64,000 bases of DNA. Source: Heterodontus francisci (Eukaryota). The DNA is taken from the NCBI RefSeq assembly GCF_036365525.1, contig NC_090393.1:54638488-54702487 (forward strand), written 5' to 3'. Each line of letters opens with the position of its first letter. Positions within the stretch are counted from its first letter, which is position 1. The translations under genes were made by a program, and so were the position numbers. The notes beneath the pieces were generated by a model, which did not search any database, was not told the DNA's origin, and worked only from the letters and a program-made list of their open reading frames with translations. Positions 22,758 through 59,800 of this stretch are shown here, piece by piece.

Positions 22758-23030
22758 TTGTGTGGAGTTTGCAAGTTCTCCCTGTGTCTGCGTGGGTTTT
22801 CTCCGGGTGCTCGGGTTTCCTCCCACAAGCCAAAAGACTTGCAGGTTGGTAGGTAAATTGGCCATTATAAATTGCCACTAGTATAGGTAGGTGGTAGGGA
22901 AATATAGGGACAGGTGGGGATGTGGGAGGAAAATGGGATTTGTGTAGGATTAGTATAAATGGGTGGTTGATGGTCGGCACAGACTCGGTGGGCTGAAGGG
23001 CCTGTTTCAGTGCTCTATCTCTAAACTAAA
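22758..23030 (+). mobile_element. 5'-truncated HE1-type SINE ~300 bp upstream of the gene 1 octamer; absent from unit B
   Basis: Core tgtggagtttgcaagttctccctgtgtctgcgtggg and CR1-derived tail gaagggcctgtttcagtgct..ctaaactaaa. Empty site tgcaaacaaatcaaat at 52141. Confidence 0.92.
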
Positions 23031-23305
23031 CAAATCAAATCTCAACTCATACTTTGCTTATCCAATGTGCTCTTCCCGAGGTCCATAGAGCTAATAAAGC
23101 ATTTACTATGCTCAAGTTTTCCTCTATTATAACCTTTACCCTTCCAAAACCCAAACATAATCGTTGTTTCATGTCTCGCTGCACCGTTTGTTTTGCCGTT
23201 TTCAATCATTCTCGTCATTGACGTTTTGTTTCTCTTTTTCTAAAATGGCTGACATGCGCGTAATTCAAATATCAGTCAACACAGGACATGGGATCCCGTG
23301 ACCTG

Positions 23306-23376
23306 ATTTACATGAATGGAAATTTGCATGCAAATGTAATATTCAATGACGTTGCGAAGGTTGAAGCTTTTTAAGG
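23306..23376 (+). promoter_or_regulatory. IgL gene 1 promoter: octamer, CRE-like and TATA-like elements
   Basis: ATTTGCAT at 23322-23329 overlaps ATGCAAAT at 23328-23335, ~125 bp upstream of the ATG. Also a variant ATTTACAT at 23306-23313, TGACGT at 23347-23352, and tttttaa at ~23368. Confidence 0.85.
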
Positions 23377-23452
23377 AGAGGTTTAGAAAGAGCCCAGAAC
23401 CACATTCGTGTCACGAACTATTCTCCATCAGACCCTCACTGGAACCTTCACC

Positions 23453-26400
23453 ATGACTGAATGGGTTCAAGTTCTTGCCGCACTGATGCTCTGTCTCCAC
23501 AGTAAGTACCGGCGTTAACCTTCATTATCGCTGCTGTTTGCATTGCTCGGAATTTTTTTTTTTGTGCTTGTGTTTAACAGACCTGAATTAGCAACAATAT
23601 TCACAATTGCAGAGTTTGACTGAACAATAACTTGTTATTTCACCAGGTACAAACGCGGATCCTGTCCTGACTCAGCCAGGATCCATCTCATCCACACCGG
23701 GGAGCACCGTCAAGATCACCTGCACCATGTCCGGAGGCAGTATCGGCAGCTACTACACGAGCTGGTACTGGCAGAAACCCAGCAGTGCCCCTGTATTGGT
23801 TTGGAGCGAGTACAGCGGTAAAGCTTCGGGGATTCCAGATCGATTTACCGGATCTGTGGAGTCATCGAGTAGCAAGTTGCTTTTAACCATCACCAAAGTG
23901 CAGTCGGAGGACGCCGCGGATTATTACTGTGCTGCCAGGAGTAGCAGTGCAGCTGCATATATTTTCGGGAGAGGAACCAAGCTGAACCTGGACAGTAAGT
24001 AACTTATTTCTACTGAGCTTTAACATTTTCAGGGTTAACATCGGAATATCAAAAATCACTTTAAAATCACTGGCTTGGTGGATTGGATGAGAGCAAAACA
24101 GGACTATTTCTCTTATATTTATCTAGAGCTTGTGAATCAGCGTCCGGTGACATTTAAAAGATCGGCATAACTGCGCCCAATTTGACGCAGGGTTTTCAGG
24201 TTGTAAGAGAGGACAGAGGCAATTTTTAAAGATGATACCAGTGCTGCAAGGTTTTAGTTGCAAGAGAACGAGAGTGAAGCTCGGTCTACTGCAAGTTTAC
24301 GGGATGATCTGCTTGAAATGAGCATAGTTCTGAGCAAAATGAAAACAGAGATTTTCACTGATCGGCCAGTCGGTAACCTGAGGACATCAATTGAATGTCA
24401 TTGGTAGAAGGGCGAAGGGACTGGATAGGATATTTTCTTTACCCAGTGGAGTGTTAGGACTGCAGTGTCCTACCTCAAAGAATAGGGCGAGCAGAATCAG
24501 ACTATCGTTTAAAAAGAAAGTGGATAAAACTTTGACAAAGGAAAAACAAATGGATGGGAAAAGGACTAAGTGGGCGCCTTTCAAAGGGTGCGATTGGCCT
24601 GTTTCTGGCCATGATTCCTGAATCCCACAGGGTCTTTGAGATCGGAATACCGCGGCCCTTTTCGGCACAAAAGGCATAAACACAAATTCAAAACTTTCAT
24701 TCTACTGAGAGTAGTACCGGAATTTAATCATCATTCTTGGATTGAGACTGCGGAAGGATAGTGTGGCGACTTGCTGTAAGTCACTCTCACTCGTCTCCAA
24801 ACTCAATGAAAACCGCTCAGTACATGATTCTCAGTCCGACATTTCGCATTAATCCCCGCTGACTATAGTAATCACACTGTTGAGCTCAGTTCAGCTGGTG
24901 ATAACCACACACACTGATCGATTTTCTGCATTCCGCAATAACAAACACCAATAATTGACATGATGCCTATTTTCTTAACAAGTCAGGGGCTCATTATCTT
25001 CCCGCCCAATCTATTGTGTAGCAATGTCTCGGAATCGGTATCAGATTCTTCCTGCTGCTCTTGTGCTCTCAATTGCGCTTTGCTGTCGGTTCTGTGGTTA
25101 GTGTGAGAGGAGTAATATGGAAAATGCACATACTCTATCGCTATTTTGACTTGGTTATTCGGTGGCATCACAGCAAAATGGGCGAAAATGAGATATAAAA
25201 CAGAACATGCCACAGAATATTTTCAATTATTCCTTTTCAAAACGATCGCTGCTATTAACTTTATCGTTCGTTGTTTACTTGCTTGCTCTCGCCATAATCC
25301 TAAAGGTCCAGAGGCATCTCTCCCCATTAGAGAGGCAGTTGGTGATACATAGTTTGAGGATCACCACTCTTCAAGTTTGGGACAAGCCTCCATGAGCTAA
25401 CACAGCCGGTAACGGGATTGAGCCCACGCTGTTGGCGTCATTCTGTCTCATATTCTAGCCGTCCACCCAGCTGACGCCCAGTTCGCTGCAAAACTCTTGT
25501 ATTTAGACAATAATATAAACTGATGGTAAAACCTGTGCAATAATCCCACGAGATTTCAGATATTTCAGTACCTGAATTTTCAGTTAAACTCCGGGTGAGG
25601 CTTGGAGATTATACAAACTCTGACAACAGGGGTTGGAGGCACTTGTCAGACTAATCGCAGTTTCAGTCTCCAAATTAATAACGTCAGGAAAGTGAGGCGA
25701 AGTTGTCGGTTCCAAGGCGAAACTCTCAGAATGGCAATAGATTGTTAAACCGTCACGGTCACATCTAGTGCTGTTGAGACGCGCCGATGTCGCTGACATC
25801 ACACCGCAACATCAGAACCAATTGCAGAGGCTCGGCCTCTCATTTTCGGATTGAAAAAAGTAGTGTTTCAACCTTTTCTTCGTTTCTTCACATTACATAA
25901 ACCATTTTACTGAGGTTTGTCATTGGCAGCTGGTGCTTGTAATACATGGTGCGAAGGGTTATTTAAAAGATATGAGATTCTGAGAGTTCGGCTTTAATCT
26001 TCTTACACTTGGTTATATTTCGTTGTTGCCTTCATGGGAATATTTCGATTGAAGAATAAGAAAAAAAAAGAACGAGCTTGCATTGTTATGCCGCCTTCCA
26101 CGACCTCAGGACATCTGAGCGCACTTCATAGCTAATTTCGTGCTTTTTAAAGGACAGTCACCCTTTGTAATGTATGAAACTCGGCAGCTTATTTGCGCAA
26201 AGTCCCACAAACATCACAGGCCAGATAATCTGTTTTAACGATGTTAGTTGAGGGATGAATATAAACCAGGTCAGGTTGGCTTTATTACTTGCAGATTGCA
26301 CTGCAGCCTCACAGCTCCAGGGACCCGGGTTCGATTCTGGGTACTGCCTGTGTGGAGTTTGCAAGTTCTCCCTGTGTCTGCGTGGGTTTCCTCCGGGTGC

Positions 26401-27644
26401 TCCGGTTTCCTCCCACATGCCAAAGACTTGCAGGTTGATAGGTTAAATTGGCCATTATAAATTGCCCCTAGTATAGGTAGGTGGTAGGGAAATATATAGG
26501 GACAGGTGGGGATGTGATAGGAATATGGGGTTAGTGTAGGATTAGTATAAATGGGTGGTTGATGGTCGGCACAGACTCGGTGGGCCGAAGGGCCTGTTTC
26601 AGTGCTGTATCTCTAAAACTAAAAAAAAATTGAGGTTATATTATTAGACAATATAGATATAATAGTTCACAATAACAGATGTTATTTAGAGGAAACAGTT
26701 TCCGTTTAGTGAAAACGTATGAATTGTGACCCACTGACCCCAAAGAAGTCCCCAAACAGCGTAATTAGAATGTGATAGAACAGTCTTCTGAGGTTTTAGG
26801 CAAAAGAGTCACCGTCGGACGAGCGGGAAACCTTGTGGCAGCGAGAAAGGAGCAAAGCGGCAGAAATCCAAATATTAGTTCAAGATTCACTTCCGTCAAA
26901 GCAAGTGCAAATCGTTGGTTTAACAGTTTGGCCTTAAATGTTTGGCCTTAAATATTGAACAATCTTTGCTGTCAGCATTGCCTTTAATATTCTCTAATAT
27001 GCCCTAATTCTGATTTATTGATTATTACGATTCTTTTTAATCTTTATCTTATTTTCTGAGCGCATTATTTTGGTTAGATTCAAATTTCTCTTAAGAATTT
27101 GTATGCGTTTCTTGCCTTAAGGAAAAGTAGGAATCTTTTCTCAGGTTATATATTCCCCGGGACTGTTGGCCCCAGCTTTTGGACTCTAACGGGATTCCGT
27201 TCTGTTAAACTCATTATAGCTATTTAATGTAATTTTAAAAGTTTTCAAAAATGTCAAACATTGATTCCGACTTTTATGTGGATGAAGAATGGATCTACTT
27301 CAATTTATTTCTGATTTTCAGATCCACGGGTCCCCTCGGTTTCGGTCCTTCCGCCTTCATCAGATCAAATCGCAGCAAAGAACACGGCGACCCTGGTGTG
27401 TTTGGTGAGCGGGTTTAACCCGGGAGCTGTGGAGATTGAGTGGACTGTAGATGACAGTGTGAGAGGGAATGGTGTTGAGACCAGTCGGATCCAGCAGGAG
27501 ACGGACAGCACGTTCAGTGTGAGCAGTTATCTGACTCTGCCAGCCTCAGAGTGGAACTCACACGAGCTTTACTCCTGTGTGGTTAAACACGAGACTCAGG
27601 CAAATCCGCTAAAAACAAGTATCTCGAGGTCCAGTTGTATCTGA
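23453..27644 (+). CDS. IGL: Immunoglobulin light chain, shark type II/lambda, germline-joined VJ, gene 1. Exons 23453-23501 (leader), 23647-23994 (leader end + V-J), 27322-27644 (C); 239 aa
   Basis: ATG 23453 gives MTEWVQVLAALMLCLH-A|GTAAGT. Acceptor caccag at 23646 gives S-TNA-DPVLTQPGSISSTPGSTVKITCTMSGGSIGSYYTSWYWQKP...DAADYYCAARSSSAAAYIFGRGTKLNLD-A|GTAAGT. Acceptor ttttcag at 27321 gives NPRVPSVSVLPPSSDQIAAKNTATLVCLVSGFNPG...YSCVVKHETQANPLKTSISRSSCI*. Both introns are phase 1 and the exons sum to 720 nt in frame. Canonical Cys/Trp/Cys, FGXG and penultimate Cys are present. Confidence 0.96.
25300..25475 (-). mobile_element. Old tRNA-derived SINE in the J-C intron (paralog ~54430-54605)
   Basis: Minus strand tcagctgggtggacggct...gtgggctcaatcccg has A/B-box-like spacing. 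Confidence 0.5.
26070..26270 (-). mobile_element. Deu-SINE/L2-tail-like remnant in the J-C intron (paralog ~55200-55400)
   Basis: gcttgcattgttatgccgccttccacgacctcaggacatc...cccacaaac...gttgagggatgaatat resembles a shark Deu-SINE 3' part in reverse. Confidence 0.5.
26299..26628 (+). mobile_element. HE1-type SINE in the gene 1 J-C intron; absent from gene 2
   Basis: B-box gggttcgattc, core and tail present. attg is duplicated at the flanks. Empty site gcagattgaggtt at 55422. Confidence 0.92.
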
Positions 27645-27858
27645 TTCAAAATCTTATGTATTGATTTGTTATTCCAGCAGCAAAGTTTCTTTACAAATAT
27701 ATTCCGCAAACGGCCATTACATGCTTGCTTTTCAGTGGAACATTTCAAATCAGAACAGTGGTGCAGTTTATCCGGTGGATTCCGCTGTCTGTTTTTTTAC
27801 AGTGTGTTCACCCTGAACTGATCAAAGTTTCAGTGTAACCTTACAAACATCACAGTTT

Positions 27859-27864
27859 AATAAA
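27859..27864 (+). terminator. Polyadenylation signal, IgL gene 1
   Basis: AATAAA ~215 nt after the stop, followed by a GT/T-rich element (tgtgttgttattttt). Conserved in gene 2. Confidence 0.8.
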
Positions 27865-29409
27865 ACGACTATTCCGCTATCTCATGTGTTGTTATTTTTC
27901 TGTGCCGTTGGGTCTGAAACAATTGTTAGCAACTTCCTACATGTGATTAAATAGCGGTTTTATTTTTGCAACATTCTGCACATTTTGTGTAAAGCCTTTG
28001 CCATCAGTCAAAATAATCAGATTATGTACACGAAGACGTGGAAGTAATCTGGCAACATATTTTCAAAGATAGACCTGGCTGAATTTTGTTCCTGTCGGGA
28101 TGGAGCTGAACCATTTGTCAGTGTTTCTGACACGAATTCAAAGCACTTGGTGCAAGTGTTTCTTAATCATCTGGTTACACAAATTCAGGGCAAACCCCGT
28201 GACCGCCTCTCTTTTGGAGACCCCGCACTTAACGCGCGGTGCAATTCCTGACACTGCATTCTTTTTTCAAAATTATCCGATGACTTTAAGTGGTCAATAA
28301 TGGTTAGATTGAATCAGGTTATTTTAGAAGCAAGTCATAACTAGAGATTCCTTGAGGCCTTTGACCGAAACCAGCTCATATAACAGTCGCGCTTTTTAAA
28401 TTCAGCCTCACACAAATCACCAACTCGGTGCAGTATCCCTTTAGCATCTAGCCTTCTTTGTTCAGACTGATGTAGGTCTACGGTACATAAATCGTTAAAA
28501 GTAGCATTATTAGTTGTTAAGGCCATAGCGAGTGAAAACAAAGTGCCAGCTAATTTCTATTGGAATAGAATACAACAGCAGGGGGGTTTATGTTAGATTT
28601 ATACAGAACTGTGCTCAGCATTGGACTCCATACTACAAATGATACTGAAGGACTTGAGAAAGTGCCGAACGTATCTGCAATGTTGTTACTCGAATTGGGA
28701 TGATGCAACTATCAGGTAAATTAGCATGTTGGGCAATTTTCCCTTATTAAGAGAAGACTGGGTATAATTTATAGAGGGCTTTAAAATTATGAAGTGCGAC
28801 AGGATAGACGTGCAGAAACTGTTCCGACGGTGCGTTAGACCAGAACAGTGAGGCGTAAATATCAGATCTCCACGGTCCGATGACATCAATAGTTTACTTG
28901 AAGATACGGATTGGTGCTTGATTGGGAGGTCTTCCAGCCCAGCTTTTCGCCATATATATTAATGAAGTCATACAGAGTTATATAAACAAGTTGCAGATCA
29001 CACCAAATTCGGAGGTCGAGTAACTTTTGCCTCTCCTCAATGGAAAAAAAACCCTCTCAGAAATATTAAAGAACCAAGGGGCTAGCAAAAATGAGGAACT
29101 GAAATAAATTAGTATTCGTAAAAATGTAGTACTGGGGAATGATTAGGACTGAAAGTTGATAAATCCCCTGGAACTGATGTTTAACATGCCACACTGTTGA
29201 AAGTGTTGGCTGGAGAGACAGTGGATGCGTTGGTGATCATCTTCCAAAATTCTATAGATTCTGGAATTGTTCCTGCAGATTGAATGGTAGCAAATGTAAC
29301 CCCACTAATTAAGAAAGGAGGGAGAGAGCAAACGGGAACCACAGACCTGTTTTCCTGACAGTAGTAGGGAAAATGCTAGAATCTAATATAAAGGATGTTA
29401 TAACCAGAC

Positions 29410-29446
29410 AGTTCCGAAGAAGGGTCACTGACCCGAAACGTTAACT
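29410..29446 (+). ncRNA. Minimal type I hammerhead ribozyme motif in a 131-bp Penelope-derived insertion (29414-29544)
   Basis: agtt-CCGAAGA-a-gggtc-act-gaccc-GAAA-CG-TT-aact: stem I agtt/aact, perfect stem II gggtc/gaccc, palindromic ACGT in place of stem III. The core has a U4C variant and one extra A. Confidence 0.65.
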
Positions 29447-31562
29447 CTGCTTCTCTTTCCACAGATGCTGCCAGACCTGCTGAGTGAATCCAGCATTTCT
29501 TGTTTTTGTTTCAGATTTCCAGCATCCGCAGTATTTTGCTTTTAAGTTAAAAAATAATGGTAGGATTCGGCAGGGTCAATAGGGATCTGTGAAAGAGAAA
29601 TCATGTGACAAACCTATTAGTCTTTGAGGATGTATCCAGCAGAATAGATAAGGCGGAGACATGGATGTGGTGTGTTTGAGTTTTCAGAAGGCTTTTGATA
29701 AGGTCCCATACAGGCTGGTCAACAAAATTAGAACACATGGGATTGGGGGTAATATACTGGCGTGGATTGAGAATTGGTTAATGGACAGAAAACAGAGAGT
29801 AGGAAAAAACTGGTCATTCTCAGGTTAGTAGGCTTTGGATCACTGCTTGTGTACCAGCTAATCACAATCTAAATCAATGGTTTGGATGTGGGGGCTGAAT
29901 GCAATATTTGCAAGTTTGCTGATTAGACAAAACCAGGTGGGCATGTGATTTGTGAGGAGGATGCAAAGAGTCTTCAAGGGGATGCAAATTGCTTAAGTGA
30001 GTGGGCAAGGATATGGTTGATGGAATATAATGTGGAAAAATATGAGGTTATCCACTTTGTTCGGAAAAAACAGAAACGCAGAGTATTTCTTAAATGGTGA
30101 GAGATTGCGAAGTGTTGATGTCCAAAGGGACCTGGGTGACTTTGTTCATAAGTCATTGAATGCTAACATGCAGGTGCAGCAAGCAATTAGGAAGCCAAAT
30201 GGTATGTTAGCCTTTATTGCAAGAGAATTTGAGTTTAGCAGTAAAGAAGTTTTGCTGCAATTGTGTAGAGTCCTGGTGAGACCGCACCTGGAGTATTGTG
30301 CGCAGTTTTGATCTTCTTACCAAAGGAGAGTGTCATAGATGGAGTGCAATGAAGGTTCACCAGACTGATACTCAGGATGGCGGGATTGTCCTGTGAGGAG
30401 AGATTGAGGAGACTGGGCCTATATTCTCTAGAATTTAGAATAATGAGAGGCGATCTCATTGAAGCACACAAAATTCTTACAGGGCTCAACCAAGTTGATG
30501 AAGGAAGGATGTTCCCCTGGTTGGCTGGGGGTGGGAGGGGAATGGTGGAGGGGGTCGGCGGTGGTCTACAACCAGGGGACACAGTGTCAGAATAAGAGGT
30601 AGGTCATTTAGGGCAGAGCTAAGGAGGAATTTCTTCACTCAGAGGGTGATAAATGTGTGGAATTCACTGGCCCAGAATGCTTGGTCATGAGTATCTTCAA
30701 GACAGAGAGTGATAGATTTCTAGACATTATTAATATCAAGGGATATGGGAATAGTGCAGCAAAATGGCATTGTGGTCGAAGATCAGCCATGATCTAGAAT
30801 AGTGGAAGACCAGGATCGAAGGGCGCTGTGGCCTACTCCTGCTCCTATGTCCTTTGATCCTAAGGTTGAAATTGAATGCTGACAAGCTCAGAAGTTTAGT
30901 TTATGTTTAGTTTAAAGATACAGCTCAATTGATCGGTTGCTATGCCCTCGATTCTTCGTAGTAACAAATAGTGAGAAATTATTAAAATTACATGATCGAG
31001 TCACAGATTAATATCGACCTGATTACAAATATGTTGCGAACACACAGCGTGAAAGTTGTTTTCAGTCAGCATACCTGTTTGTGCACATTGTTTCATGTCT
31101 ACTGCTAAGATAAACAGCTAGTGCATGTATTAGATATTATCATTCACGTAGCTGCCGCCCAACCCCCACCTGCAGTAGGATACCAAACAATTTGATAGGG
31201 CCTTGGTGAGCAATTTCTTCACTCAATCTTCATAATTCTGTACCCCAGAGGGCTGTGACTGCTCAGTAGTTGAGCTTATTTAAGACAGAAATCGATAGTT
31301 TTTTGGATACTGAAAGAATCAAGGAATTTAGGAGTAGGGCTGGAAAGTGTATTTGATGTGGAAGATCAGGCAGGAAAATCATTGAATGGCGGAACAGGCT
31401 CAAAAGCCCAAATGGCGCGATGCAATTTCTATTTCTTTTGTTGCTTTGTTCTCATTTCTTTGTTTTGTAGCACCACAGTGGGCAGTCTGAGTGAAAGAGA
31501 TTTCCCTTCTCTTCCCAGCAGTGTTGCTGTGGAGCAGCCCGTAGGCAACCGCCCCACCATGA

Positions 31563-44631: not shown

Positions 44632-44982
44632 ATTAGATTAGAGATACAGCACTGAAACAGGCAGTTCGGCCCACCGAGTCTGTGCCGACCATCAACCACC
44701 CATTCATACTAATAGTACACTAATCCCATATTCCTACCAAACATCCCCACCTGTCCCTATATTTCCCTACCACCTCCCTGTACTAGTGACAATTTATAAT
44801 GGCCAATTTACCTACCAACCTGCAAGTCTTTTGGCTTGTGGGAGGAAACCGGAGCACCCGGAGAAAACCCACGCAGACACAGGGAGAACTTGCAAACTGC
44901 ACACAGGCAGTACCCGGAATCGAACCCGGGTCCCTTGAGCTGTGAGGCTGCAGTGTTAACCACTGCGCCACTGTGCCGCCCC
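44632..44982 (-). mobile_element. Full-length HE1-type tRNA-derived SINE nested in a LINE
   Basis: Minus strand head ggggcggcacagtggcgcagtggtt (A box), gggttcgattcc (B box), core and tail. Confidence 0.93.
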
Positions 44983-52095: not shown

Positions 52096-52435
52096 GTCTG
52101 ATGCCAATAGGGACAGTGCCCAATTTATTTAATTCCTTGCTGCAAACAAATCAAATCTCAACTCATACTTTGCTTATCCAATGCGCTCTTCCCGAGGTCC
52201 ATAGAGCTATTAAAGCATTTACTATGCTCAAGTTTTCTTCTATTATAACCTTTACCCTTCTAAAACCCAAACCTAATCGCTATTCCATGTCTCGCTGCGC
52301 CGTGTATTTTGCCGTTTTCAATCATTCTCCATTTGGATCCGATCTCATTGACGTTTTGTTTCTCTTTTTCTAAAATGACTGACATGCTCGCAATTCAAAT
52401 ATCAGTCAACGCAGGGCATGGGAGCCCGTGACCTG

Positions 52436-52506
52436 ATTTACATGAATGGAAATTTGCATGTAAATTTAATATTCAATGACGTTGCGAAGGTTGAAGCTTC
52501 TTAAGG
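52436..52506 (+). promoter_or_regulatory. IgL gene 2 promoter: octamer and CRE-like elements
   Basis: ATTTGCAT at 52452-52459 followed by ATGTAAAT. Upstream ATTTACAT and downstream TGACGT are conserved with gene 1. Confidence 0.85.
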
Positions 52507-52582
52507 AGAGGTTTAGAAAGAGCACAGAACCACATTCGTGTCAGGAACTATTCTCCATCAGACCCTCACCAGAACCTTCACC

Positions 52583-55500
52583 ATGACTGAATGGGTTCAG
52601 GTTCTTGCCGCACTGATGCTCTGTCTCCACAGTAAGTACAGGCGTTAACCTTCATTATCGCTGCTGTTTGCATTGCTCGGAATTTTTTTTTTGTGCTTGT
52701 GTTTAACAGACCTGAATTAGCAACAATATTCACAATTGCAGAGTTTGACTCATCAATAATTTGTCATTTCACCAGGTACAAACGCGGATCCTGTCCTGAC
52801 TCAGCCAGGATCCATCTCAACCACACCGGGGAGCACCGTCAAGATCACCTGCACCATGTCCGGAGGCAGCATCGGCAGCTACTACACGAGCTGGTACTGG
52901 CAGAAACCCAGCAGTGCCCCTGTGTTGGTTTGGAGCGAGTACAGCGGTAAAGCTTCGGGGATTCCAGATCGATTTACCGGGTCTGTGGAGTCATCGAGTA
53001 ACAAGTTGCTTTTAACCATCACCAAGGTGCAGTCGGAGGACGCCGCGGATTATTACTGTGCTGCCCTGCTTGGCAGTACAGCTGCATTTATTTTCGGGAG
53101 AGGAACCAAGCTGAACCTGGACAGTAAGTAAATTATTTCTACTGAGCTTTAACATTTTCAGCGTTAACATCGGAATATCAAAAATCACTTTAAAATCACT
53201 GGCTTGGTGGATTGGATGAGAGCAAATCAGGACTATTTCTCTTATAACATATGTATACAGAGCTTGTGAATCAGCGTCCGGAGACATTTAAAAGATCGGC
53301 ATAACTGCGCCCGATTTTACGCAGGGTTTTCAGGTTGTAAGAGAGGACAGAGGCAATTTTTAAAGATGATACCAGTGCTGCAAGGTTTTAGTTACAAGAG
53401 AACGAGAGTGAAGCTCGGTCTACTGCAAGTTTACGGGATGATCTGCTTGAAATGAGCATAGTTCTGAGCAAAATGAAAACAGATATTTTCACTGATCGGT
53501 CAGTCGGTAACCTGAGGACATCAATTGAATGTCATTGGTAGAAGGGCGAAGGGACTGGATAGGATATTTTCTTTACCCAGTGGAGTGTTAGGACTGCAGT
53601 GTCCTATCTCAAAGAATAGGGCGAGCAGAATCAGACTATCGTTTAAAAAGAAAGTGGATAAAACTTTGACAAAGGAAAAACAAATGGATGGGAAAAGGAC
53701 TAAGTGGGCGCCTTTCAAAGGCGATTGGCCTGTTTCTGGCCATGATTCCTGAATCCCACAGGGTCTTTGAGATCGGAATACCGCGGCCCTTTACGACACA
53801 AAAGGCATAAACACAAATTCAAAACTTTCATTCTACTGAGAGTAGTACCGGAATTTAATCATCATTCTTGGATTGAGACTGCGGAAGGATAGTGTGGCGA
53901 CTTGCTGTAAGTCACTCTCACTCGTCTCCAAACTCAGTGAAAACCGCTCAGTACATGATTCTCAGTCCGACATTTCGCATTAATCCCCGCTGACTATAGT
54001 AATCACACTGTTGAGCTAAGTTCAGCTGGTGGTAACCATCCACACTGATCGATTTTCTCCATTCCGCAATAACAAACACCAATAATTGACATGATGCCTA
54101 TTTTCTTAACAAGTCAGGGGCTCATTATCTTCCCGCCCAATCTATTGTGTAGCAATGTCTCGGAATCGGTATCAGATTCTTCCTGCTGCTCTTGTGCTCT
54201 CAATTGCGCTTTGCTGCATGTTCTGTGGTTAGTGTGAGAGGAGTAATATGGAAAATGCACATACTCTATCGCTATTTTGACTTGGTTATTCGGTGGCATC
54301 ACAGTAAAATGGGCTAAAATGAGATATGAAACAGAACATGCGACAGAATATTTTCAATTATTCCTTTTCAAAACGATCGCTGCTACTAACTTTATCGTTC
54401 GTTGTTTACTTGCTTGCTCTCGCCATAATCCTAAAGGTCCAGAGGCATCTCTCCCCATTAGAGAGGCAGTTGGTGATACATAGTTTGAGGATCACCACTC
54501 CTCAAGTTTGGGACAAGCCTCCATGAGCTAACACAGCCGTTAAATGGATTGAGCCCACGCTGTTGGCGTCTTTCTGTCTCATATTCTAGCCGTCCACCCA
54601 GCTGACGCTCAGTTCTCTGCAAAACTCTTGTATTTAGACAATAATATAAACTGATGGTAAAACCTGTGCAATAATCCCACGAGATTTCAGATATTTCAGT
54701 ACCTGAATTTTCAGCTAAACTCTGGGTGAGGCCTGGAGATTATACAAACTCTGACAACAGGGGTTGGAGGCACTTGTCAGACTAATCGCAGTTTCAGTCT
54801 CCAAATTAATAACGTCAGGAAAGTGAGGCGAAGTTGTCGGTTCCAAGGCGAAACTCTTAGAATGGCAATAGATTTTTAAACCGTCACGGGTACATCTAGT
54901 GCTGGTGAGACGCGCCGATGTAGCTGACATCACACCTCAACATCAGAACCAATTGTAGAGGCTCGGCCTCTCATTTTAGTATTGAAAAAAGTAGTGTTTC
55001 AACCCTTTCTTCATTTCTTCACATTACATAAACCATTTTACTGAGGTTTGTCATTGGCAGCTGGTGCTTGTAATACATGGTGCGAAGGATTATTTAAAAG
55101 ATATGAGATTCTGAGAGTTCGGCTTTAATCTTCTTACACTTGGTAATATTTCGTTGTTGCTATCATGGGAATATTTCGATTGAAGAATAAGTAAAAAAAA
55201 GAACGAGCTTGCATTGTTATGCCGCCTTCCACGACCTCAGGACATCTGAGCGCGCTTCATAGCGAATTTCGTGCTTTTTAAAGGACAGTCACCCTTTGTA
55301 ATGTATGAAACTCGGCAGCTTATTTGCGCAAAGTCCCACAAACATCACAGGACAGATAATCTGTTTTAACGATGTTAGTTGAGGGATGAATATAAACCAG
55401 GTCAGGTTGGCTTTATTACTTGCAGATTGAGGTTATATTATTAGACAATATAGATATAATAGTTCACAATAACAGATGTTATTTAGAGGAAACAGTTTCC

Positions 55501-56444
55501 GTTTAGTGAAAACGTATGAATTGTGACACTGACCCCAAAGAAGTCCCCAAATAGCGTAATTAGAATGTGATAGAACAGTCTTCTGAGGTTTTAGGCAAAA
55601 GAGTCGGACGAGCGGGAAACCTTGTGGCAGCGAGAAAGGAGCAAAGCGACAGAAATCCAAATATTAGTCCAAGATTCACTTCCGTCAAAGCAAGTGCAAA
55701 TTCGAAATTATTTAATAGTTGGTTTAACAATTTGGCCTTAAACGTTTGGCCTTAAATATTGAACAATCTTTGCTGTCAGCATTGCCGTCAATATTCTCTA
55801 ATATGCCCTAATTCTGATTTATTGATTATTACGATTCTTTTTCATCTTTATCTTATTGTCTGAGCGCAATATTTTGCTTAGATTCAAATTTCTCTTAAGA
55901 ATTTGTATGCGTTTCTTGCCTGAAGGAAAAGTAGGAATCTTTTCTCAGGTTATTCCCCGGGACTGTTGGCCCCAGCTTTTGGACTCTAACGGGATTCCGT
56001 TCTATTAAACTCATTATAGCTATTTAATGTAATTTTAAAAGTTTTCAAAAATGTCAAACATTGATTCCGACTTTTATGTGGATGAAAAATGGATCTACTT
56101 AAATTTGTTTCTGATTTTCAGATCCACGGGTCCCCTCGGTTTCGGTCCTTCCGCCTTCATCAGATCAAATCGCAGCAAAGAACACGGCGACCCTGGTGTG
56201 TTTGGTGAGCGGTTTTAACCCGGGAGCTGTGGAGATTGAGTGGACTGTAGATGACAGTGTGAGAGGGAATGGTGTTGAGACCAGTCGGATCCAGCAGGAG
56301 ACGGACAACACGTTCAGTGTGAGCAGTTATCTGACTCTGCCAGCCTCAGAGTGGAACTCACACGAGCTTTACTCCTGTGTGGTTAAACACGAGACACAGG
56401 CAAATCCGCTTAAAACAAGTATCTCGAGGTCCAGTTGTATCTGA
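52583..56444 (+). CDS. IGL: Immunoglobulin light chain, shark type II/lambda, germline-joined VJ, gene 2. Exons 52583-52631, 52776-53123, 56122-56444; 239 aa
   Basis: Same exon sizes (49/348/323 nt) and GT-AG sites as gene 1. V-J reads ...DAADYYCAALLGSTAAFIFGRGTKLNLD. C differs from gene 1 by one residue (TDST vs TDNT). No stops or frameshifts. Confidence 0.96.
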
Positions 56445-56657
56445 TTCAAAATCTTATGTATTGATTTGTTATTCCAAAAGCAAAGTTTCTTTACAAATAT
56501 ATTCCGCAAACGGCCATTACATGCTTGCTTTTAAGTGGAACATTTCAAATCAGAACAGTGGTGCAGTTTATCCGGTGGATTCCGCTGTCTGTTTTTTACA
56601 GTGTGTTCACCCTGAACTGATCAAAGTTTCAGTGTAACCTTACAAACATCACAGTTT

Positions 56658-56663
56658 AATAAA
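56658..56663 (+). terminator. Polyadenylation signal, IgL gene 2
   Basis: AATAAA plus downstream GT-rich element at the homologous position. Confidence 0.8.
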
Positions 56664-56892
56664 ACGACTATTCCGCTATCTCGTGTGTTGTTATTTTTCT
56701 GTGCCGTTGGGTCTGAAACAATTGTTAGCAACTTCCTACATGTGATGAAATAGCGGTTTTATTTTTGCAACATTCTGCACATTTTGTGTAAAGCCTTTGA
56801 CATCAGTCAAAATAATCAGATTATGTACACGAAGACGTGGAAGTAATCTGGCAACATATTTTCAAAGATAGACCTGGCTGAATTTCGTTCGT

Positions 56893-59800
56893 GTCGGGAT
56901 GGAGCTGAACCATTTGTCAGTGTTTCTGACACGAATTCAAAGCACTTGGTGCAAGTGTTTCTAAATCATCTGGTTACACAAATTCAGGGCAAACCCCGTG
57001 ACCGCCTCTCTTTTGGAGACCCCGCACTTAACGCGCGGTGCAATTCCTGACACTGCATTCTTTTTTCAAAATTATCCGATGACTTTAAGTGGTCAATAAT
57101 GGTTAGATTGAATCAGGTTATTTTAGAAGCAAGTCATAACTAGAGATTCCTTGAGGCCTTTGACCGAAACCAGCTCATATAACAGTCGCGCTTTTTAAAT
57201 TCAGCCTCACACAAATCACCAACTCGGTGCAGTATCCCTTTAGTATCAAGCCTTCTTTGTTCAGACTGATGTAGGTCTACGGTACATAAATCGTTAAAAG
57301 TAGCATTATTAGTTGTTAAGGCCATAGCGAGTGAAAACAAAGTGCCAGCTAATTTCTATTGGAATAGAATACAACAGCAGGGGGGTTTATGTTAGATTTA
57401 TACAGAACTGTGCTCTGCATTGGACTCCATACTACAAATGATACTGAAGGACTTGAGAAAGTGCCGAACGTATCTGCAATGTTGTTACTCGAATTGGGAT
57501 GATGCAACTATCAGGTAAATTAGCATGTTGGGCAATTTTCCCTTATTAAGAGAAGACTGGGTATAATTTATGGAGGGCTTTAAAATTATGAAGTGCGACA
57601 GGATAGACGTGCAGAAACTGTTTCCACGGTGCGTTGGACCAGAACAGAGAGGCGTAAATATCAGATCTCCACGCACCGATGACATCAATAGTTTACTTGA
57701 AGATACGGATTGGTGCTTGATTGGGAGTTAGGAGAGGGAGAATAAGCTTTCGTGTTTCATTCTCTGATTGGTTTCTACGTGACAAACGGAATTCCGAAGG
57801 GATTAGTTCTTCCAGCCCAGCTTTTCGCCATATATATTAATGAAGTCATACAGATTTATATAAACAAGTTGCAGATCACACCAAATTCGGAGGTCGAGTA
57901 ACTTTTGCCTCTCCTCAATGGAAAAAAAACCCTCTCAGAAATATTAAAGAACCAAGGGACTAGCAAAAATGAGGAACTGAAATAAATTAGTATTCGTAAA
58001 AATGTAGTACTGGGGAATGAATAGGACTGAAAGTTGATAAATCCCCTGGAACTGATGTTTAACATGCCACACTGTTGAAAGTGTTGGCTGGAGAGACAGT
58101 GGATGCGTTGGTGATCATCTTCCAAAATTCTATAGATTCTGCAATTGTTCCTGCTGATTGAATGGTAGCAAATGTAACCCCACTAATTAAGAAAGGAGGG
58201 AGAGAGCAAACGGGAACCACAGACCTGTTTTCCTGACAGTAGGAGGGAAAATGCTAGAATCTAATATAAAGAATGTTATAACCGGACAGTTACAAAATAA
58301 TGGTAGGATTGGGCAGGGTCAATAGGGATCTGTGAAAGAGAAATCATGTGACAAACCTATTAGTTTTTGAGGATGTATCCAGCAGAATAGATAAGGTGGA
58401 GCCGTGGATGTGGTGTGTTTGAATTTACAGAAAGCTTTTGATAAAGTCCCATGCAGGCTGGTCAACAAAATTAGAACACATGGGATTGGGGGTAATATAC
58501 TGGCGTGGATTGAGAATTGGTTAATGGACAGAAAACAGAGAGTAGGAAAAAACTGGTCATTCTCAGGTTAGCAGGCTTTGGATCACTGCTTGTGTACCAG
58601 CTAATCACAATCTAAATCAATGATTTGGATGTGGGGGCTGAATGCAAGTTTGCTGATGACACAAAACCAGGTGGGCATGTGATTTGTGAGGAGGATGCAA
58701 AGAGTCTTCAAGGGATGCAAATTGCTTAAGTGAGTAGGCAAGGATATGGTTGATGGAATATAATGTGGGAAAATATGAGGTTATCCACTTTGTTAGGAAA
58801 AAACAGAAACGCAGAGTATTTCTTAAATGGTGAGAGATTGCGAAGTGTTGATGTCAAAAGGCAACTGAGTGTCTTTGTTCATAAGTCATTGAATGCTAAC
58901 ATGCAGGTGCAGCAAGCAATTAGGAAGCCAAATGGTATGTTAGCCTTTATTGCAAGAGAATTTGAGTTTCGGAGTAAAGATGTCTTGCTGCAATTGTGTC
59001 GAGTCCTGGTGAGACCGCACCTGGAGTATTGTGCGCAGTTTTGTTCATCTTACCAAAGGAGAGTGTCATAGAGGGAGTGCAATGAAGGTTCACCAGACTG
59101 ATACCCGGGATGGCGGGATTGTCCTACGAGGAGAGATTGAGGAGACTGGGCCTATATTCTCTAGAGTTTAGAATAATGAGAGGCGATCTCATTGAAGCTT
59201 CCAAAATTCTTACAGGGCTCGACCAAGTTGATGCAGGAAGGACGTTCCCCTGGCTGGCGGGGGGTGGGAGGGGAATGGTGGAGGGGGTCGGCGGTGGTCT
59301 ACAACCAGGGGACACAGTCTCAGAATAAGTGGTAGGTCATTTAGGACAGAGCTAAGGAGGAATTTCTTCACTCAGAGAGTGGTAAATGTGTGGAATTCAC
59401 TGGCCCAGAACTGCTGTGGAGGCTTGGTCATGAGTATCTTCTAGACAGTGATAGATTTCTAGACATTAACAATATCAAGGGATATGGGAATAGTGCAGCA
59501 AAATGGCATTGTGGTCGAAGATCAGCCATGATCTAGAATAGTGGCAGACCTACTCCTGCTCCTATGTCCTTTGTTCCTAAGGTCGAAATTGAATGCTGAC
59601 AAGCTCAGAAGGCTGAATTGACCGGTTGCTATGCCCTAGATTCTTCGCAGTTACAAATAGTGAGAAATTATTAAAATAACATGATCGAGTCACAGATTAA
59701 TATCGACCTGATTTCAAATATGTTGCTAACACACAGCGTGAAAGTTGTTTTCAGTCAGCATACCTGTTTGTGCACATTGTTTCATGTCTACTGCTAAGAT

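What the first reader, a model, noticed from the sequence alone, without database searches (positions are those of the whole stretch)
23937..23960. Germline divergence between paralogs is concentrated in CDR3 and is entirely non-synonymous
Seen: gene 1 AGG AGT AGC AGT GCA GCT GCA TAT (RSSSAAAY) versus gene 2 CTG CTT GGC AGT ACA GCT GCA TTT (LLGSTAAF, 53066-53089). That is 7 substitutions in 24 nt, changing 5 of 8 residues, none silent. The preceding ~290 nt of the exon has only 6 differences by eye (4 silent, plus S>T in FR1 and S>N in FR3). CDR1 and CDR2 protein and J are identical. Inferred: genes that lost junctional diversity are regaining CDR3 variety at the inherited level, by diversifying selection, targeted germline mutation or short-tract conversion among cassettes.
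Basis: partly seen in the sequence, partly recalled or inferred. Interest (0 to 1): 0.85.

Follow-up and report, generated by a model that had tools for sequence, protein, structure and literature searches.

The report
Shark antibody genes swap CDR3 patches
Two neighbouring ready-joined antibody light-chain genes of the horn shark differ almost only in the CDR3 binding loop, but each version of the loop also sits in another, more distant copy of the gene, so the difference looks like a swapped patch between gene copies, a variation on a pattern known since the 1990s.

Summary
Gene 1 (23937-23960) and gene 2 (53066-53089) differ at 7 of 24 bases and 5 of 8 residues. The surrounding 3.3 kb differs by 3.2%. 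Seven of the 13 exon differences fall in CDR3 (P=8e-6; scan statistic P=0.003).

The window is from Heterodontus francisci. It holds two tandem 29-kb cassettes of the germline-joined type II (lambda) light chain. The exons match the annotated proteins XP_067911702.1 and XP_067911420.1. RNA contigs show that this gene family is spliced and very highly expressed.

Both CDR3 versions already exist elsewhere. Another lambda gene on the same chromosome (P0116) has gene 2's CDR3 exactly. A further one (P0117) has gene 1's with one change. The rest of the protein rejects both pairings (AU test p=0.017 and 0.012).

So the CDR3 has a different history from the gene body. I read this as patch-wise gene conversion among cassettes, not fresh mutation. 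Across the family CDR2 is as variable as CDR3. Close lambda paralogs of seven groups from six other sharks and rays also vary most, or nearly most, in CDR3.

CDR-focused germline divergence of joined light-chain genes was published in 1993-95. The DNA of the other cassettes could not be fetched, so the tract ends are unproven. Other notes of this scan on this window cover the array and the tandem substitutions; one on other DNA of this genome (s1-873602, not examined) reports CDR3-confined germline variability.

The parts
23322..23329 (+). Ig octamer ATTTGCAT about 125 nt upstream of the ATG of gene 1 (gene 2 has it at 52452-52459)
23453..23501 (+). Leader exon of gene 1 (lambda cassette 1)
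   Evidence: The ATG is read. RNA contigs join 23501 to 23647 across a GT..AG intron. The translation is contained in P0118.
23647..23994 (+). Germline-joined VJ exon of gene 1 (FR1 to FR4 in one exon, no RSS)
   Evidence: Pfam V-set, E=1.7e-14. No heptamer in or near the exon. Exon ends come from RNA contigs. Exact match to XP_067911702.1 = P0118.
23937..23960 (+). The finding: eight CDR3 codons of gene 1, R-type (RSSSAAAY). All 7 differences from gene 2 lie at 23937-23959.
   Evidence: A near-identical CDR3 (RSSSAVAY) is in paralog P0117.
27322..27644 (+). Constant-region exon of gene 1, with its stop codon
   Evidence: Pfam C1-set, E=3e-20. The loose ends of RNA contigs behind 23994 match 27322 onward.
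52583..52631 (+). Leader exon of gene 2 (lambda cassette 2)
   Evidence: and homology with gene 1
52776..53123 (+). Germline-joined VJ exon of gene 2
   Evidence: Pfam V-set. 100% identical to XP_067911420.1 = P0052.
53066..53089 (+). Eight CDR3 codons of gene 2, L-type (LLGSTAAF)
   Evidence: The CDR3 of paralog P0116 is identical in protein. The L-type letters also stand in DNA contigs of a more diverged paralog.
56122..56444 (+). Constant-region exon of gene 2
23028..29413 (+). Gene-body tract of cassette 1 that is 2.5% diverged from cassette 2 (52144-58291), against 5.8% in the cassette flanks. It looks homogenised.
   Evidence: chi-square P=1.5e-20

Best explanation
The 24 bases are the CDR3 of a germline-joined type II (lambda) immunoglobulin light-chain gene of the horn shark. 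The gene sits in a head-to-tail array of about 29-kb cassettes, each made of a leader exon, a VJ exon and a C exon.

The two neighbouring cassettes carry two different CDR3 versions that already exist in the family: an R-type and an L-type. Each version recurs in another, more distantly related cassette on the same chromosome. The rest of the gene gives a different genealogy.

The difference therefore most likely arose by non-reciprocal exchange (gene conversion) between cassettes. The simplest form is one short tract of 23 to 105 nt laid over CDR3, in a gene body that is otherwise kept similar between neighbours.

Shown: the clustering of differences, the identity of the genes, their expression, the recurrence of both CDR3 versions, and the conflict between CDR3 and gene body. 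Inferred: that conversion is the process, its tract length and direction, and that selection on antigen-binding loops keeps CDR2 and CDR3 versions distinct while frameworks and C exons stay uniform.
For: Clustering: 7 substitutions in 23 nt with none in the 39 nt before or the 43 nt after. The nearest other differences are at 23897 and 24003. P=0.003 to 8e-6.

Family alignment: gene 2 and P0116 have 0 differences in CDR3 and 7 in the rest of V. Gene 1 and P0117 have 1 and 11. Gene 1 and gene 2 have 5 and 2. Fisher tests give p=0.021 and 0.0095.

The AU test on all columns except CDR3 rejects a {gene2, P0116} clade (p=0.0165) and a {gene1, P0117} clade (p=0.012). It recovers {gene1, gene2} with support 80/81. 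All four combinations of CDR2 type and CDR3 type exist.

DNA contigs of the sequenced animal: two contigs read CTGCTTGGCAGT after 23936. A separate contig (X1 record 6) has 49 mismatches and 15 gap letters over 419 nt against gene 1, yet carries the L-type letters at 23940, 23949 and 23959. So the same patch sits in a much more diverged background.

The gene body is 2.5% diverged against 5.8% in the flanks, which fits ongoing homogenisation. The mosaic lies within a single exon, so chimeric gene models cannot produce it.
Against: Donor identity at silent sites, tract ends and direction are therefore untested. Only three diagnostic bases and a 12-nt clip are known for a second L-type copy.

The AU groups were named after the alignment had been seen, although they were named from columns left out of the tree. 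Support for {gene1, gene2} is only 80/81.

CDR3 is hypervariable, so some parallel change is possible. A history of old R and L lineages with later body homogenisation fits the protein data equally well; that too is conversion, with a different tract.
Confidence: 0.6

Rival explanations
1. The CDR3 lineages are old and inherited by descent. A two-gene block [R-type, L-type] was duplicated. Long conversion tracts between neighbours later homogenised promoter, frameworks, introns and C exon, but left CDR3 unconverted, either through patchy mismatch repair or through selection against converted CDR3.
For: The gene body is 2.5% diverged against 5.8% in the flanks. R and L types recur in other cassettes. 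The CDR3 divergence of 29% far exceeds even the flank divergence, so the two versions are older than the cassette duplication or evolve much faster.
Against: It needs two tract ends, each within about 40 nt of CDR3 on either side, or a discontinuous tract. The intron beside the L-type CDR3 in the other L-type copy is at least 12% diverged from gene 1, so that copy shows no trace of close kinship with the gene 1/gene 2 pair outside the patch. The order of genes along the array is not known.
Confidence: 0.22
2. The divergence arose in place. After gene 1 and gene 2 duplicated, new point substitutions accumulated in CDR3 under diversifying selection. The match with P0116 and P0117 is convergence.
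For: CDR3 dN is 0.49, against dS 0.055 in the rest of the exon and 3.2% in the introns. That gives P(6 or more replacement changes) between 3e-5 and 6e-4. CDR-focused replacement excess is published for skate joined genes (PMC2192082). CDR3 is the most variable region, or nearly so, in all seven paralog groups of the six other species.
Against: It requires five residues to converge exactly on P0116's CDR3, and the same Leu, Gly and Ser codons in a second contig. Nd against Sd inside CDR3 is not significant (p=0.13 to 0.63). No gradient of single changes is seen: 5 of the 7 changes lie in 7 adjacent bases.
Confidence: 0.08
3. There is a targeted germline mutation process resembling shark somatic hypermutation (AID plus an error-prone polymerase). 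It produces tandem multi-base changes at CDR hotspots in germ cells.
For: Two tandem AG>CT changes lie at 23937-38 and 23940-41. A second clustered patch lies in the CDR2 of a paralog: 4 changes in 7 nt, including three adjacent bases, with 0 in the other 94 nt. RGYW/WRCY density is 17-21 per 100 nt in the CDRs, against 3-7 in FR1 and FR3. Tandem non-templated mutation is a known shark somatic signature (PMC4279169).
Against: The L-type patch exists as a possible template in another cassette, so the change need not be untemplated. FR2 (16.7 per 100 nt) and FR4 (13.3) have similar hotspot densities yet no differences in this pair. Nothing here shows that AID acts in germ cells. Selection on two-step codon changes gives the same look.
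Confidence: 0.05
4. The two genes come from independent germline V-J joining events, and the CDR3 difference is fossil junctional diversity.
For: RAG-type joining in germ cells is documented and recent for nurse shark NS4 genes (PMC2193156). CDR3 length varies across the wider horn-shark family, from 5 to 11 residues. An unchecked note of this scan reports an unjoined lambda-type cluster 1.24 Mb away.
Against: Both genes have the same CDR3 length and the same 3' half, with the central GCAGCTGCA motif and identical J codons. Five of the 7 differences lie in the V-side codons rather than at the joint. The flanks are 97% identical, with no trace of RSS. Lambda is joined in every cartilaginous fish studied, so the join is old (PMC5192425, PMC4279169). 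The 2-codon shorter paralog is explained by loss of one GCAGCT unit.
Confidence: 0.03
5. The difference is an assembly artefact or somatic variation picked up from lymphocyte DNA.
For: The array is repetitive (92-98% identical). The DNA runs that hold the stretch come from the same sample as the assembly, so they are not independent.
Against: Both versions lie in one contiguous window. Both are seen in DNA contigs and in RNA contigs. Both recur in other annotated genes. A 23-nt patch inside otherwise matching long reads is not how collapsed repeats fail. A somatic clone would not reach the consensus.
Confidence: 0.02

Closest known systems
[quoted passage not shown] 1995, PMC2192082)
   Same: Many L-VJ-C clusters, all joined in the germline. 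Predicted differences fall preferentially in CDRs, and replacement changes exceed silent ones. The joined genes are expressed.
   Different: The isotype differs (type I / sigma-2, not lambda), and so does the species. As far as I could read (abstract only), that work did not report the same CDR3 recurring on different gene bodies.
Sandbar shark lambda light-chain genes (Hohman et al. 1993 PNAS 90:9882, listed as reference 10 in PMC2193156; not readable here)
   Same: Closest named proteins: P0001, P0043 and P0048 are 75-82% identical. The isotype and the fused VJ exon are the same. The title itself speaks of diversity without rearrangement.
   Different: The genus differs. The content beyond the title is from my memory and was not checked.
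Nurse shark NS4 germline-rearranged genes (Lee et al. 2000, PMC2193156)
   Same: Joined VJ genes in a cluster family, with octamer and splice signals intact. The joints are analysed as fossils of RAG action.
   Different: NS4 has both split and joined members, and several recent independent joins. The pair here shares one joint, and the difference lies mostly on the V side of CDR3.
Chicken pseudo-V gene conversion of the rearranged light and heavy chain genes
   Same: Short templated patches copied from paralogous V donors into a V(J) exon, diversifying the CDRs.
   Different: In chicken the process is somatic, AID-driven and runs from pseudogenes into one functional gene. Here the exchange is in the germline, over evolutionary time, and between functional cassettes.
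Concerted evolution with patch exchange in tandem immune gene families (V gene segments, MHC, protocadherins)
   Same: Homogenised bodies with mosaic variable patches, and conflict between trees from different segments.
   Different: Here the exchanged module includes a pre-formed V-J junction, which in other vertebrates is made somatically.

Membership tests
Cartilaginous-fish type II (lambda) germline-joined Ig light-chain cluster | Cluster of one leader exon, one fused VJ exon and one C exon, with no RSS or spacer between V and J | tested here: met
   The exons were read and bounded by RNA joints. No heptamer lies in or near the VJ exon.
Cartilaginous-fish type II (lambda) germline-joined Ig light-chain cluster | A V-set domain followed by a C1-set domain, with closest similarity to shark lambda chains | tested here: met
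   Pfam V-set and C1-set. Sandbar shark lambda is 75-82% identical. The exons are contained exactly in the H. francisci 'immunoglobulin lambda-1 light chain-like' proteins.
Cartilaginous-fish type II (lambda) germline-joined Ig light-chain cluster | Transcribed and spliced as a light chain | tested here: met
   Depth in two RNA runs covers exons only. There is a GT..AG joint from 23501 to 23647, and the loose ends behind 23994 equal the C exon start. The contigs cannot be assigned to single cassettes.
Germline gene conversion among tandem paralogs | A segment whose genealogy conflicts with that of its flanks | tested here: met
   The AU test on all non-CDR3 columns rejects the CDR3-defined pairs (p=0.0165 and 0.012). 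The Fisher tests on difference counts give p=0.021 and 0.0095. This is protein-level evidence only.
Germline gene conversion among tandem paralogs | A donor copy identical to the recipient over the tract at nucleotide level, silent sites included | tested here: inconclusive
   P0116 has the identical CDR3 protein. A second DNA contig background carries L-type letters at 3 diagnostic sites, and two contigs share the 12-nt start of the patch.
Germline gene conversion among tandem paralogs | Mapped tract breakpoints | not testable with these tools
From the window alone the tract is between 23 and 105 nt.
Positive (diversifying) selection at antigen-binding sites | dN greater than dS at CDR codons | tested here: inconclusive
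   CDR3 has Nd 6.5 over 18 sites and Sd 0.5 over 6 sites. This is not significant alone (p=0.13 to 0.63), and the contrast with the rest of the VJ exon gives p=0.02 or 0.10 depending on rounding. CDR3 dN exceeds the neutral rate (P below 6e-4), but conversion gives the same signal.
Positive (diversifying) selection at antigen-binding sites | Site-model support across the gene family | not tested
   There are no nucleotide sequences for the other cassettes. Protein variability is highest in CDR2 and CDR3.
Shark-type tandem hypermutation acting in the germline | Untemplated contiguous multi-base substitutions | tested here: inconclusive
   Tandem AG>CT occurs twice, but a possible template carrying the same patch exists.
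Independent RAG-mediated germline joins (as in nurse shark NS4) | Joints that differ by trimming or P/N addition, with closely related split genes present | tested here: not met
   The pair shares CDR3 length, joint motif and J codons. No split lambda gene lies in the window. The literature reports lambda joined in all species (PMC5192425).

The most novel reading that the evidence does not exclude
Pre-joined lambda cassettes may use germline cassette-to-cassette swapping of CDR2 and CDR3 modules as an evolutionary-time substitute for the combinatorial and junctional diversity they gave up. The exchange may be started in germ cells by the same enzymes that act on these hotspot-rich loops in B cells. 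That would also explain the tandem multi-base differences.
Probability: 0.15. Interest if true: 0.7.

Novelty: new member of a known kind. Interest (0 to 1): 0.4.

Why it matters
Lambda light chains of sharks and rays cannot make junctional diversity, so their primary repertoire is whatever the germline array encodes. If binding-loop versions are shuffled between cassettes while frameworks are kept uniform, that would show how a non-rearranging antibody locus builds and keeps variety. It would be a germline parallel to somatic gene conversion in birds. Chromosome-scale shark and ray genomes now make this testable across many species. It does not change the known picture that joined genes differ mainly in their CDRs.

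Tried and rejected
No DNA of the other six cassettes could be read, so GENECONV-type tests and site-model dN/dS were not run.
- The exon ORFs of the window are not in the protein collection as such.
- The first protein search with the 116-aa exon could not reach the full-length chains because of the length window. Searching with the 161-aa sandbar shark hit solved this.
Each exon translation was compared separately with the annotated proteins.
- The search of earlier findings by sequence gave a blank.
- PMC7094790 and PMC47676 are not held. Only the abstract of PMC2192082 could be read.
- A small inversion as the cause of the AG>CT pairs is rejected. By my hand comparison, the reverse complement of gene 2's stretch matches gene 1 worse (16 of 24) than the direct alignment does (18 of 24).
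- No copy of either 24-nt patch lies elsewhere in the window, even allowing 3 mismatches. Any donor lies outside.
- No second Heterodontus species was found among the protein hits, so I could not test whether the CDR3 types are shared across species.
- Independent V-J joins, a somatic origin and assembly error were considered and given low odds (see the rivals).
Full report
**What is in the sequence.**
The window holds a head-to-tail repeat with a period of about 29 kb: two full units and the tail of a third (self-comparison). Each full unit carries:
- an Ig octamer (23322-23329 and 52452-52459);
- a leader exon (23453-23501 and 52583-52631);
- one exon that encodes a whole V domain with its J already attached (23647-23994 and 52776-53123);
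- about 3.3 kb downstream, a constant exon (27322-27644 and 56122-56444).

Pfam calls V-set for the VJ exon and C1-set for the constant exon. No recombination-signal heptamer lies in or near the VJ exon.

A pairwise alignment of 23028-26298 with 52144-55429 has 103 substitutions in 3,267 columns (3.2%). Seven of them lie at 23937, 23938, 23940, 23941, 23943, 23949 and 23959. There are none in the 39 nt before this stretch or the 43 nt after it.
- The chance that 7 or more of 13 exon substitutions fall in the predefined 24 nt is 8e-6.
- A scan statistic over the aligned block gives P=0.003. Five substitutions in 7 nt gives P=0.001.
- Over the whole cassette alignment a 23-nt window with 7 substitutions is not rare (P=0.12), because the flanks are more diverged. 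Within the 6-kb gene body it is the only such cluster.

Nei-Gojobori counting gives Nd 6.5 and Sd 0.5 in CDR3. 'None silent' is therefore slightly too strong, since AGG>CGG is a silent step. The rest of the VJ exon has dN 0.008 and dS 0.055. The C exon has dN 0.004 and dS 0.041. Within CDR3 the replacement excess is not significant on its own. The replacement rate does exceed the local neutral rate (P between 3e-5 and 6e-4).

**Identity of the genes.**
- The closest named proteins of the VJ exon are sandbar shark lambda light chains, at 75% identity.
- A search with one of those hits reached full-length annotated chains.
- Gene 2's VJ exon is 100% identical to XP_067911420.1 of Heterodontus francisci (P0052). 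All three exon translations of gene 1 are contained in XP_067911702.1 (P0118); for gene 2 the VJ and C exons are contained in P0052, while its leader check failed on a one-base offset slip of mine and was not repeated.
- I compared each exon separately and did not build a joined model.

So this is the horn shark type II (lambda) light-chain array. [quoted passage not shown]

**Expression.**
Two runs from the same animal behave as RNA. Their depth covers exons only, they join 23501 to 23647 across a GT..AG intron, and their loose ends behind 23994 equal the start of the C exon. The depth is very high. Letters of both CDR3 versions occur in many RNA contigs. The contigs cannot be assigned to single cassettes.

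**The key result: both CDR3 versions pre-exist.**
The 90% protein cluster of P0052, with three further representatives, gives eight genomic lambda genes on the same 83.7-Mb chromosome and one cDNA.
- P0116 has gene 2's CDR3 exactly (LLGSTAAF).
- P0117 has gene 1's with one change (RSSSAVAY).
- Outside CDR3 the grouping is the other way round. Gene 1 and gene 2 share DPVLTQ, the CDR2 SEYSGKAS and KVQSED. P0116 and P0117 share DAVLTQ..STSPG and NVQSED, and each has its own CDR2.

Difference counts for the pairs:

| Pair | V domain without CDR3 | CDR3 |
|---|---|---|
| gene 1 / gene 2 | 2 | 5 |
| gene 2 / P0116 | 7 | 0 |
| gene 1 / P0117 | 11 | 1 |

- These counts are heterogeneous (Fisher p=0.021 and 0.0095).
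- A maximum-likelihood tree of all columns except CDR3 recovers gene 1 with gene 2 (support 80/81).
- The AU test rejects gene 2 with P0116 (p=0.0165) and gene 1 with P0117 (p=0.012).
- All four combinations of CDR2 type and CDR3 type exist.
- Because FR1 to FR4 lie in one exon, chimeric gene models cannot produce this mosaic.

**Support at the DNA level, limited.**
The tables of the one reads call had to serve instead.
- In the DNA contigs of the sequenced animal, two contigs continue after 23936 with the first 12 letters of the L-type patch.
- A separate 419-nt contig (X1 record 6) differs from gene 1 by 49 letters and 15 gap letters, mostly in the J-C intron. Yet it has the L-type letters at 23940, 23949 and 23959. 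The same patch therefore sits beside an intron that is at least 12% diverged, whereas gene 2's intron differs from gene 1's by under 4%.
- A third paralog, matching P0053, has a CDR3 two codons shorter. The missing six letters are one GCAGCT unit of the GCAGCTGCA motif. That looks like slippage rather than a separate join.
- A contig matching P0116's CDR2 shows 4 substitutions in 7 nt (23808 and 23812-23814) and none in the other 94 nt. Clustered patches are therefore not peculiar to CDR3.

**How I read it.**
- The gene body (23028-29413) is 2.5% diverged between the two cassettes, against 5.8% in the flanks. This fits homogenisation between neighbours.
- Inside that homogenised body sits a sharply bounded patch whose two versions are family-wide alleles.
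- The simplest account is one short conversion tract over CDR3. From the window alone it is 23 to 105 nt long. If P0116 itself were the partner it is at most 82 nt, because gene 2 lacks P0116's N in FR3 and M in FR4.
- The main rival is descent of old R and L lineages with later body homogenisation that spared CDR3. That is also conversion, but it needs two tract ends close to CDR3 or a patchy tract.

Other accounts rank lower:
- Fresh substitution under selection would need exact convergence on five residues and on the same codons.
- Independent V-J joins do not fit the shared length, joint motif and J codons, nor the position of most differences on the V side.
- A germline hypermutation-like process is suggested only by the two tandem AG>CT changes and the hotspot-rich loops, and a template for the patch exists.

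**How general and how new.**
- Across the eight horn shark genes, differences per site are 0.54 in CDR2, 0.59 in CDR3, 0.09-0.16 in the frameworks, 0.11 in CDR1 and 0.03 in C. So the concentration in CDR3 alone holds for this pair only.
- I also compared seven groups of close lambda paralogs (90% or more identical) from six other species: Mustelus, Rhinoraja (two groups), Hemitrygon (two groups), Hypanus and Hemiscyllium. In five of the seven, CDR3 is the most variable region of the V domain; in the other two CDR1 is slightly higher.
- CDR3 types recur on different bodies there too. In one Rhinoraja group, an FR3 motif and the CDR3 type show all the combinations expected from exchange.
- CDR-focused, replacement-biased germline differences among joined clusters were published for skate (PMC2192082). 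The sandbar shark lambda paper is titled for diversity without rearrangement (reference 10 in PMC2193156).
- What may be new is the explicit evidence that the pre-formed CDR3 moves between cassettes. I found no paper in the held library that says so, but the library lacks most of the older primary papers.

**Limits.**
- Only two DNA sequences of the family were available.
- The recombination evidence is at protein level, plus a few diagnostic bases from contigs of the same animal.
- The AU groups were named after the alignment had been seen.
- The order of genes along the array is unknown.
- An unchecked note of this scan reports an unjoined lambda-type cluster 1.24 Mb away. If true, it would keep recent germline joining possible for other members of the family.

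Noticed in passing
window 22758-23027 and 26299-26628: Two insertions of about 270 and 330 nt from one repeat family. They are 93% alike, and another copy lies on the minus strand at 44633-44955. They are present in cassette 1 only, in the same orientation, and they bracket the leader and VJ exons. They were inserted after the cassettes duplicated.
   Followed up: partly
window 23948-23957: A perfect 10-nt palindrome, TGCAGCTGCA, lies at the centre of gene 1's CDR3 (gene 2 keeps 6 nt of it). The chance of one in a random 36-mer is about 0.025. It may be a fossil of P nucleotides from the original germline join, or just three Ala codons.
   Followed up: partly
window 23028-29413 against 52144-58291: The gene body is 1.7-3.2% diverged while the rest of the cassette is 4.2-5.8% diverged. 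The low-divergence tract ends at the 131-bp insertion near 29413-29545.
   Followed up: partly
window 23808-23814: A DNA contig matching paralog P0116 differs from gene 1 by 4 substitutions in 7 nt of CDR2 (EYS to QLG, with three adjacent bases changed). It has none in the other 94 nt it covers.
   Followed up: partly
window 23402-24013 (RNA runs X5, X6): About 2,600-2,800 RNA contigs per run lie on the two exons, many at 90-99% likeness. That is far more variants than there are genes, which may reflect somatic hypermutation of the joined genes.
   Followed up: no
window 23632-23794 and 23972 onward: A 1,611-nt DNA contig (23 mismatches) matches 23632-23794 and then jumps to 23972, skipping 177 nt that include CDR2, FR3 and CDR3. 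It is possibly a deleted pseudogene copy elsewhere in the genome.
   Followed up: no
window 27496-27510 (C exon) and protein P0115: Gene 1's constant domain has ETDSTF where six of the seven other genomic lambda genes have ETDNTF. The only other gene with S is P0115. This is a further hint of exchange between cassettes.
   Followed up: no
proteins P0171 and P0203-P0209 (Rhinoraja longicauda): Three CDR3 types recur among eight near-identical skate lambda genes. The FR3 motifs VSARF and VPDRF occur with more than one CDR3 type, the same mosaic pattern as in the horn shark.
   Followed up: partly
protein P0076 (horn shark, CDR3 of 5 residues): In the tree without CDR3 this gene groups with a Scyliorhinus lambda chain (support 83/91), not with the other horn shark genes. 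It is an older lambda sub-lineage. It probably matches the scan's note of a 5-residue CDR3 gene 200 kb beyond the window.
   Followed up: partly
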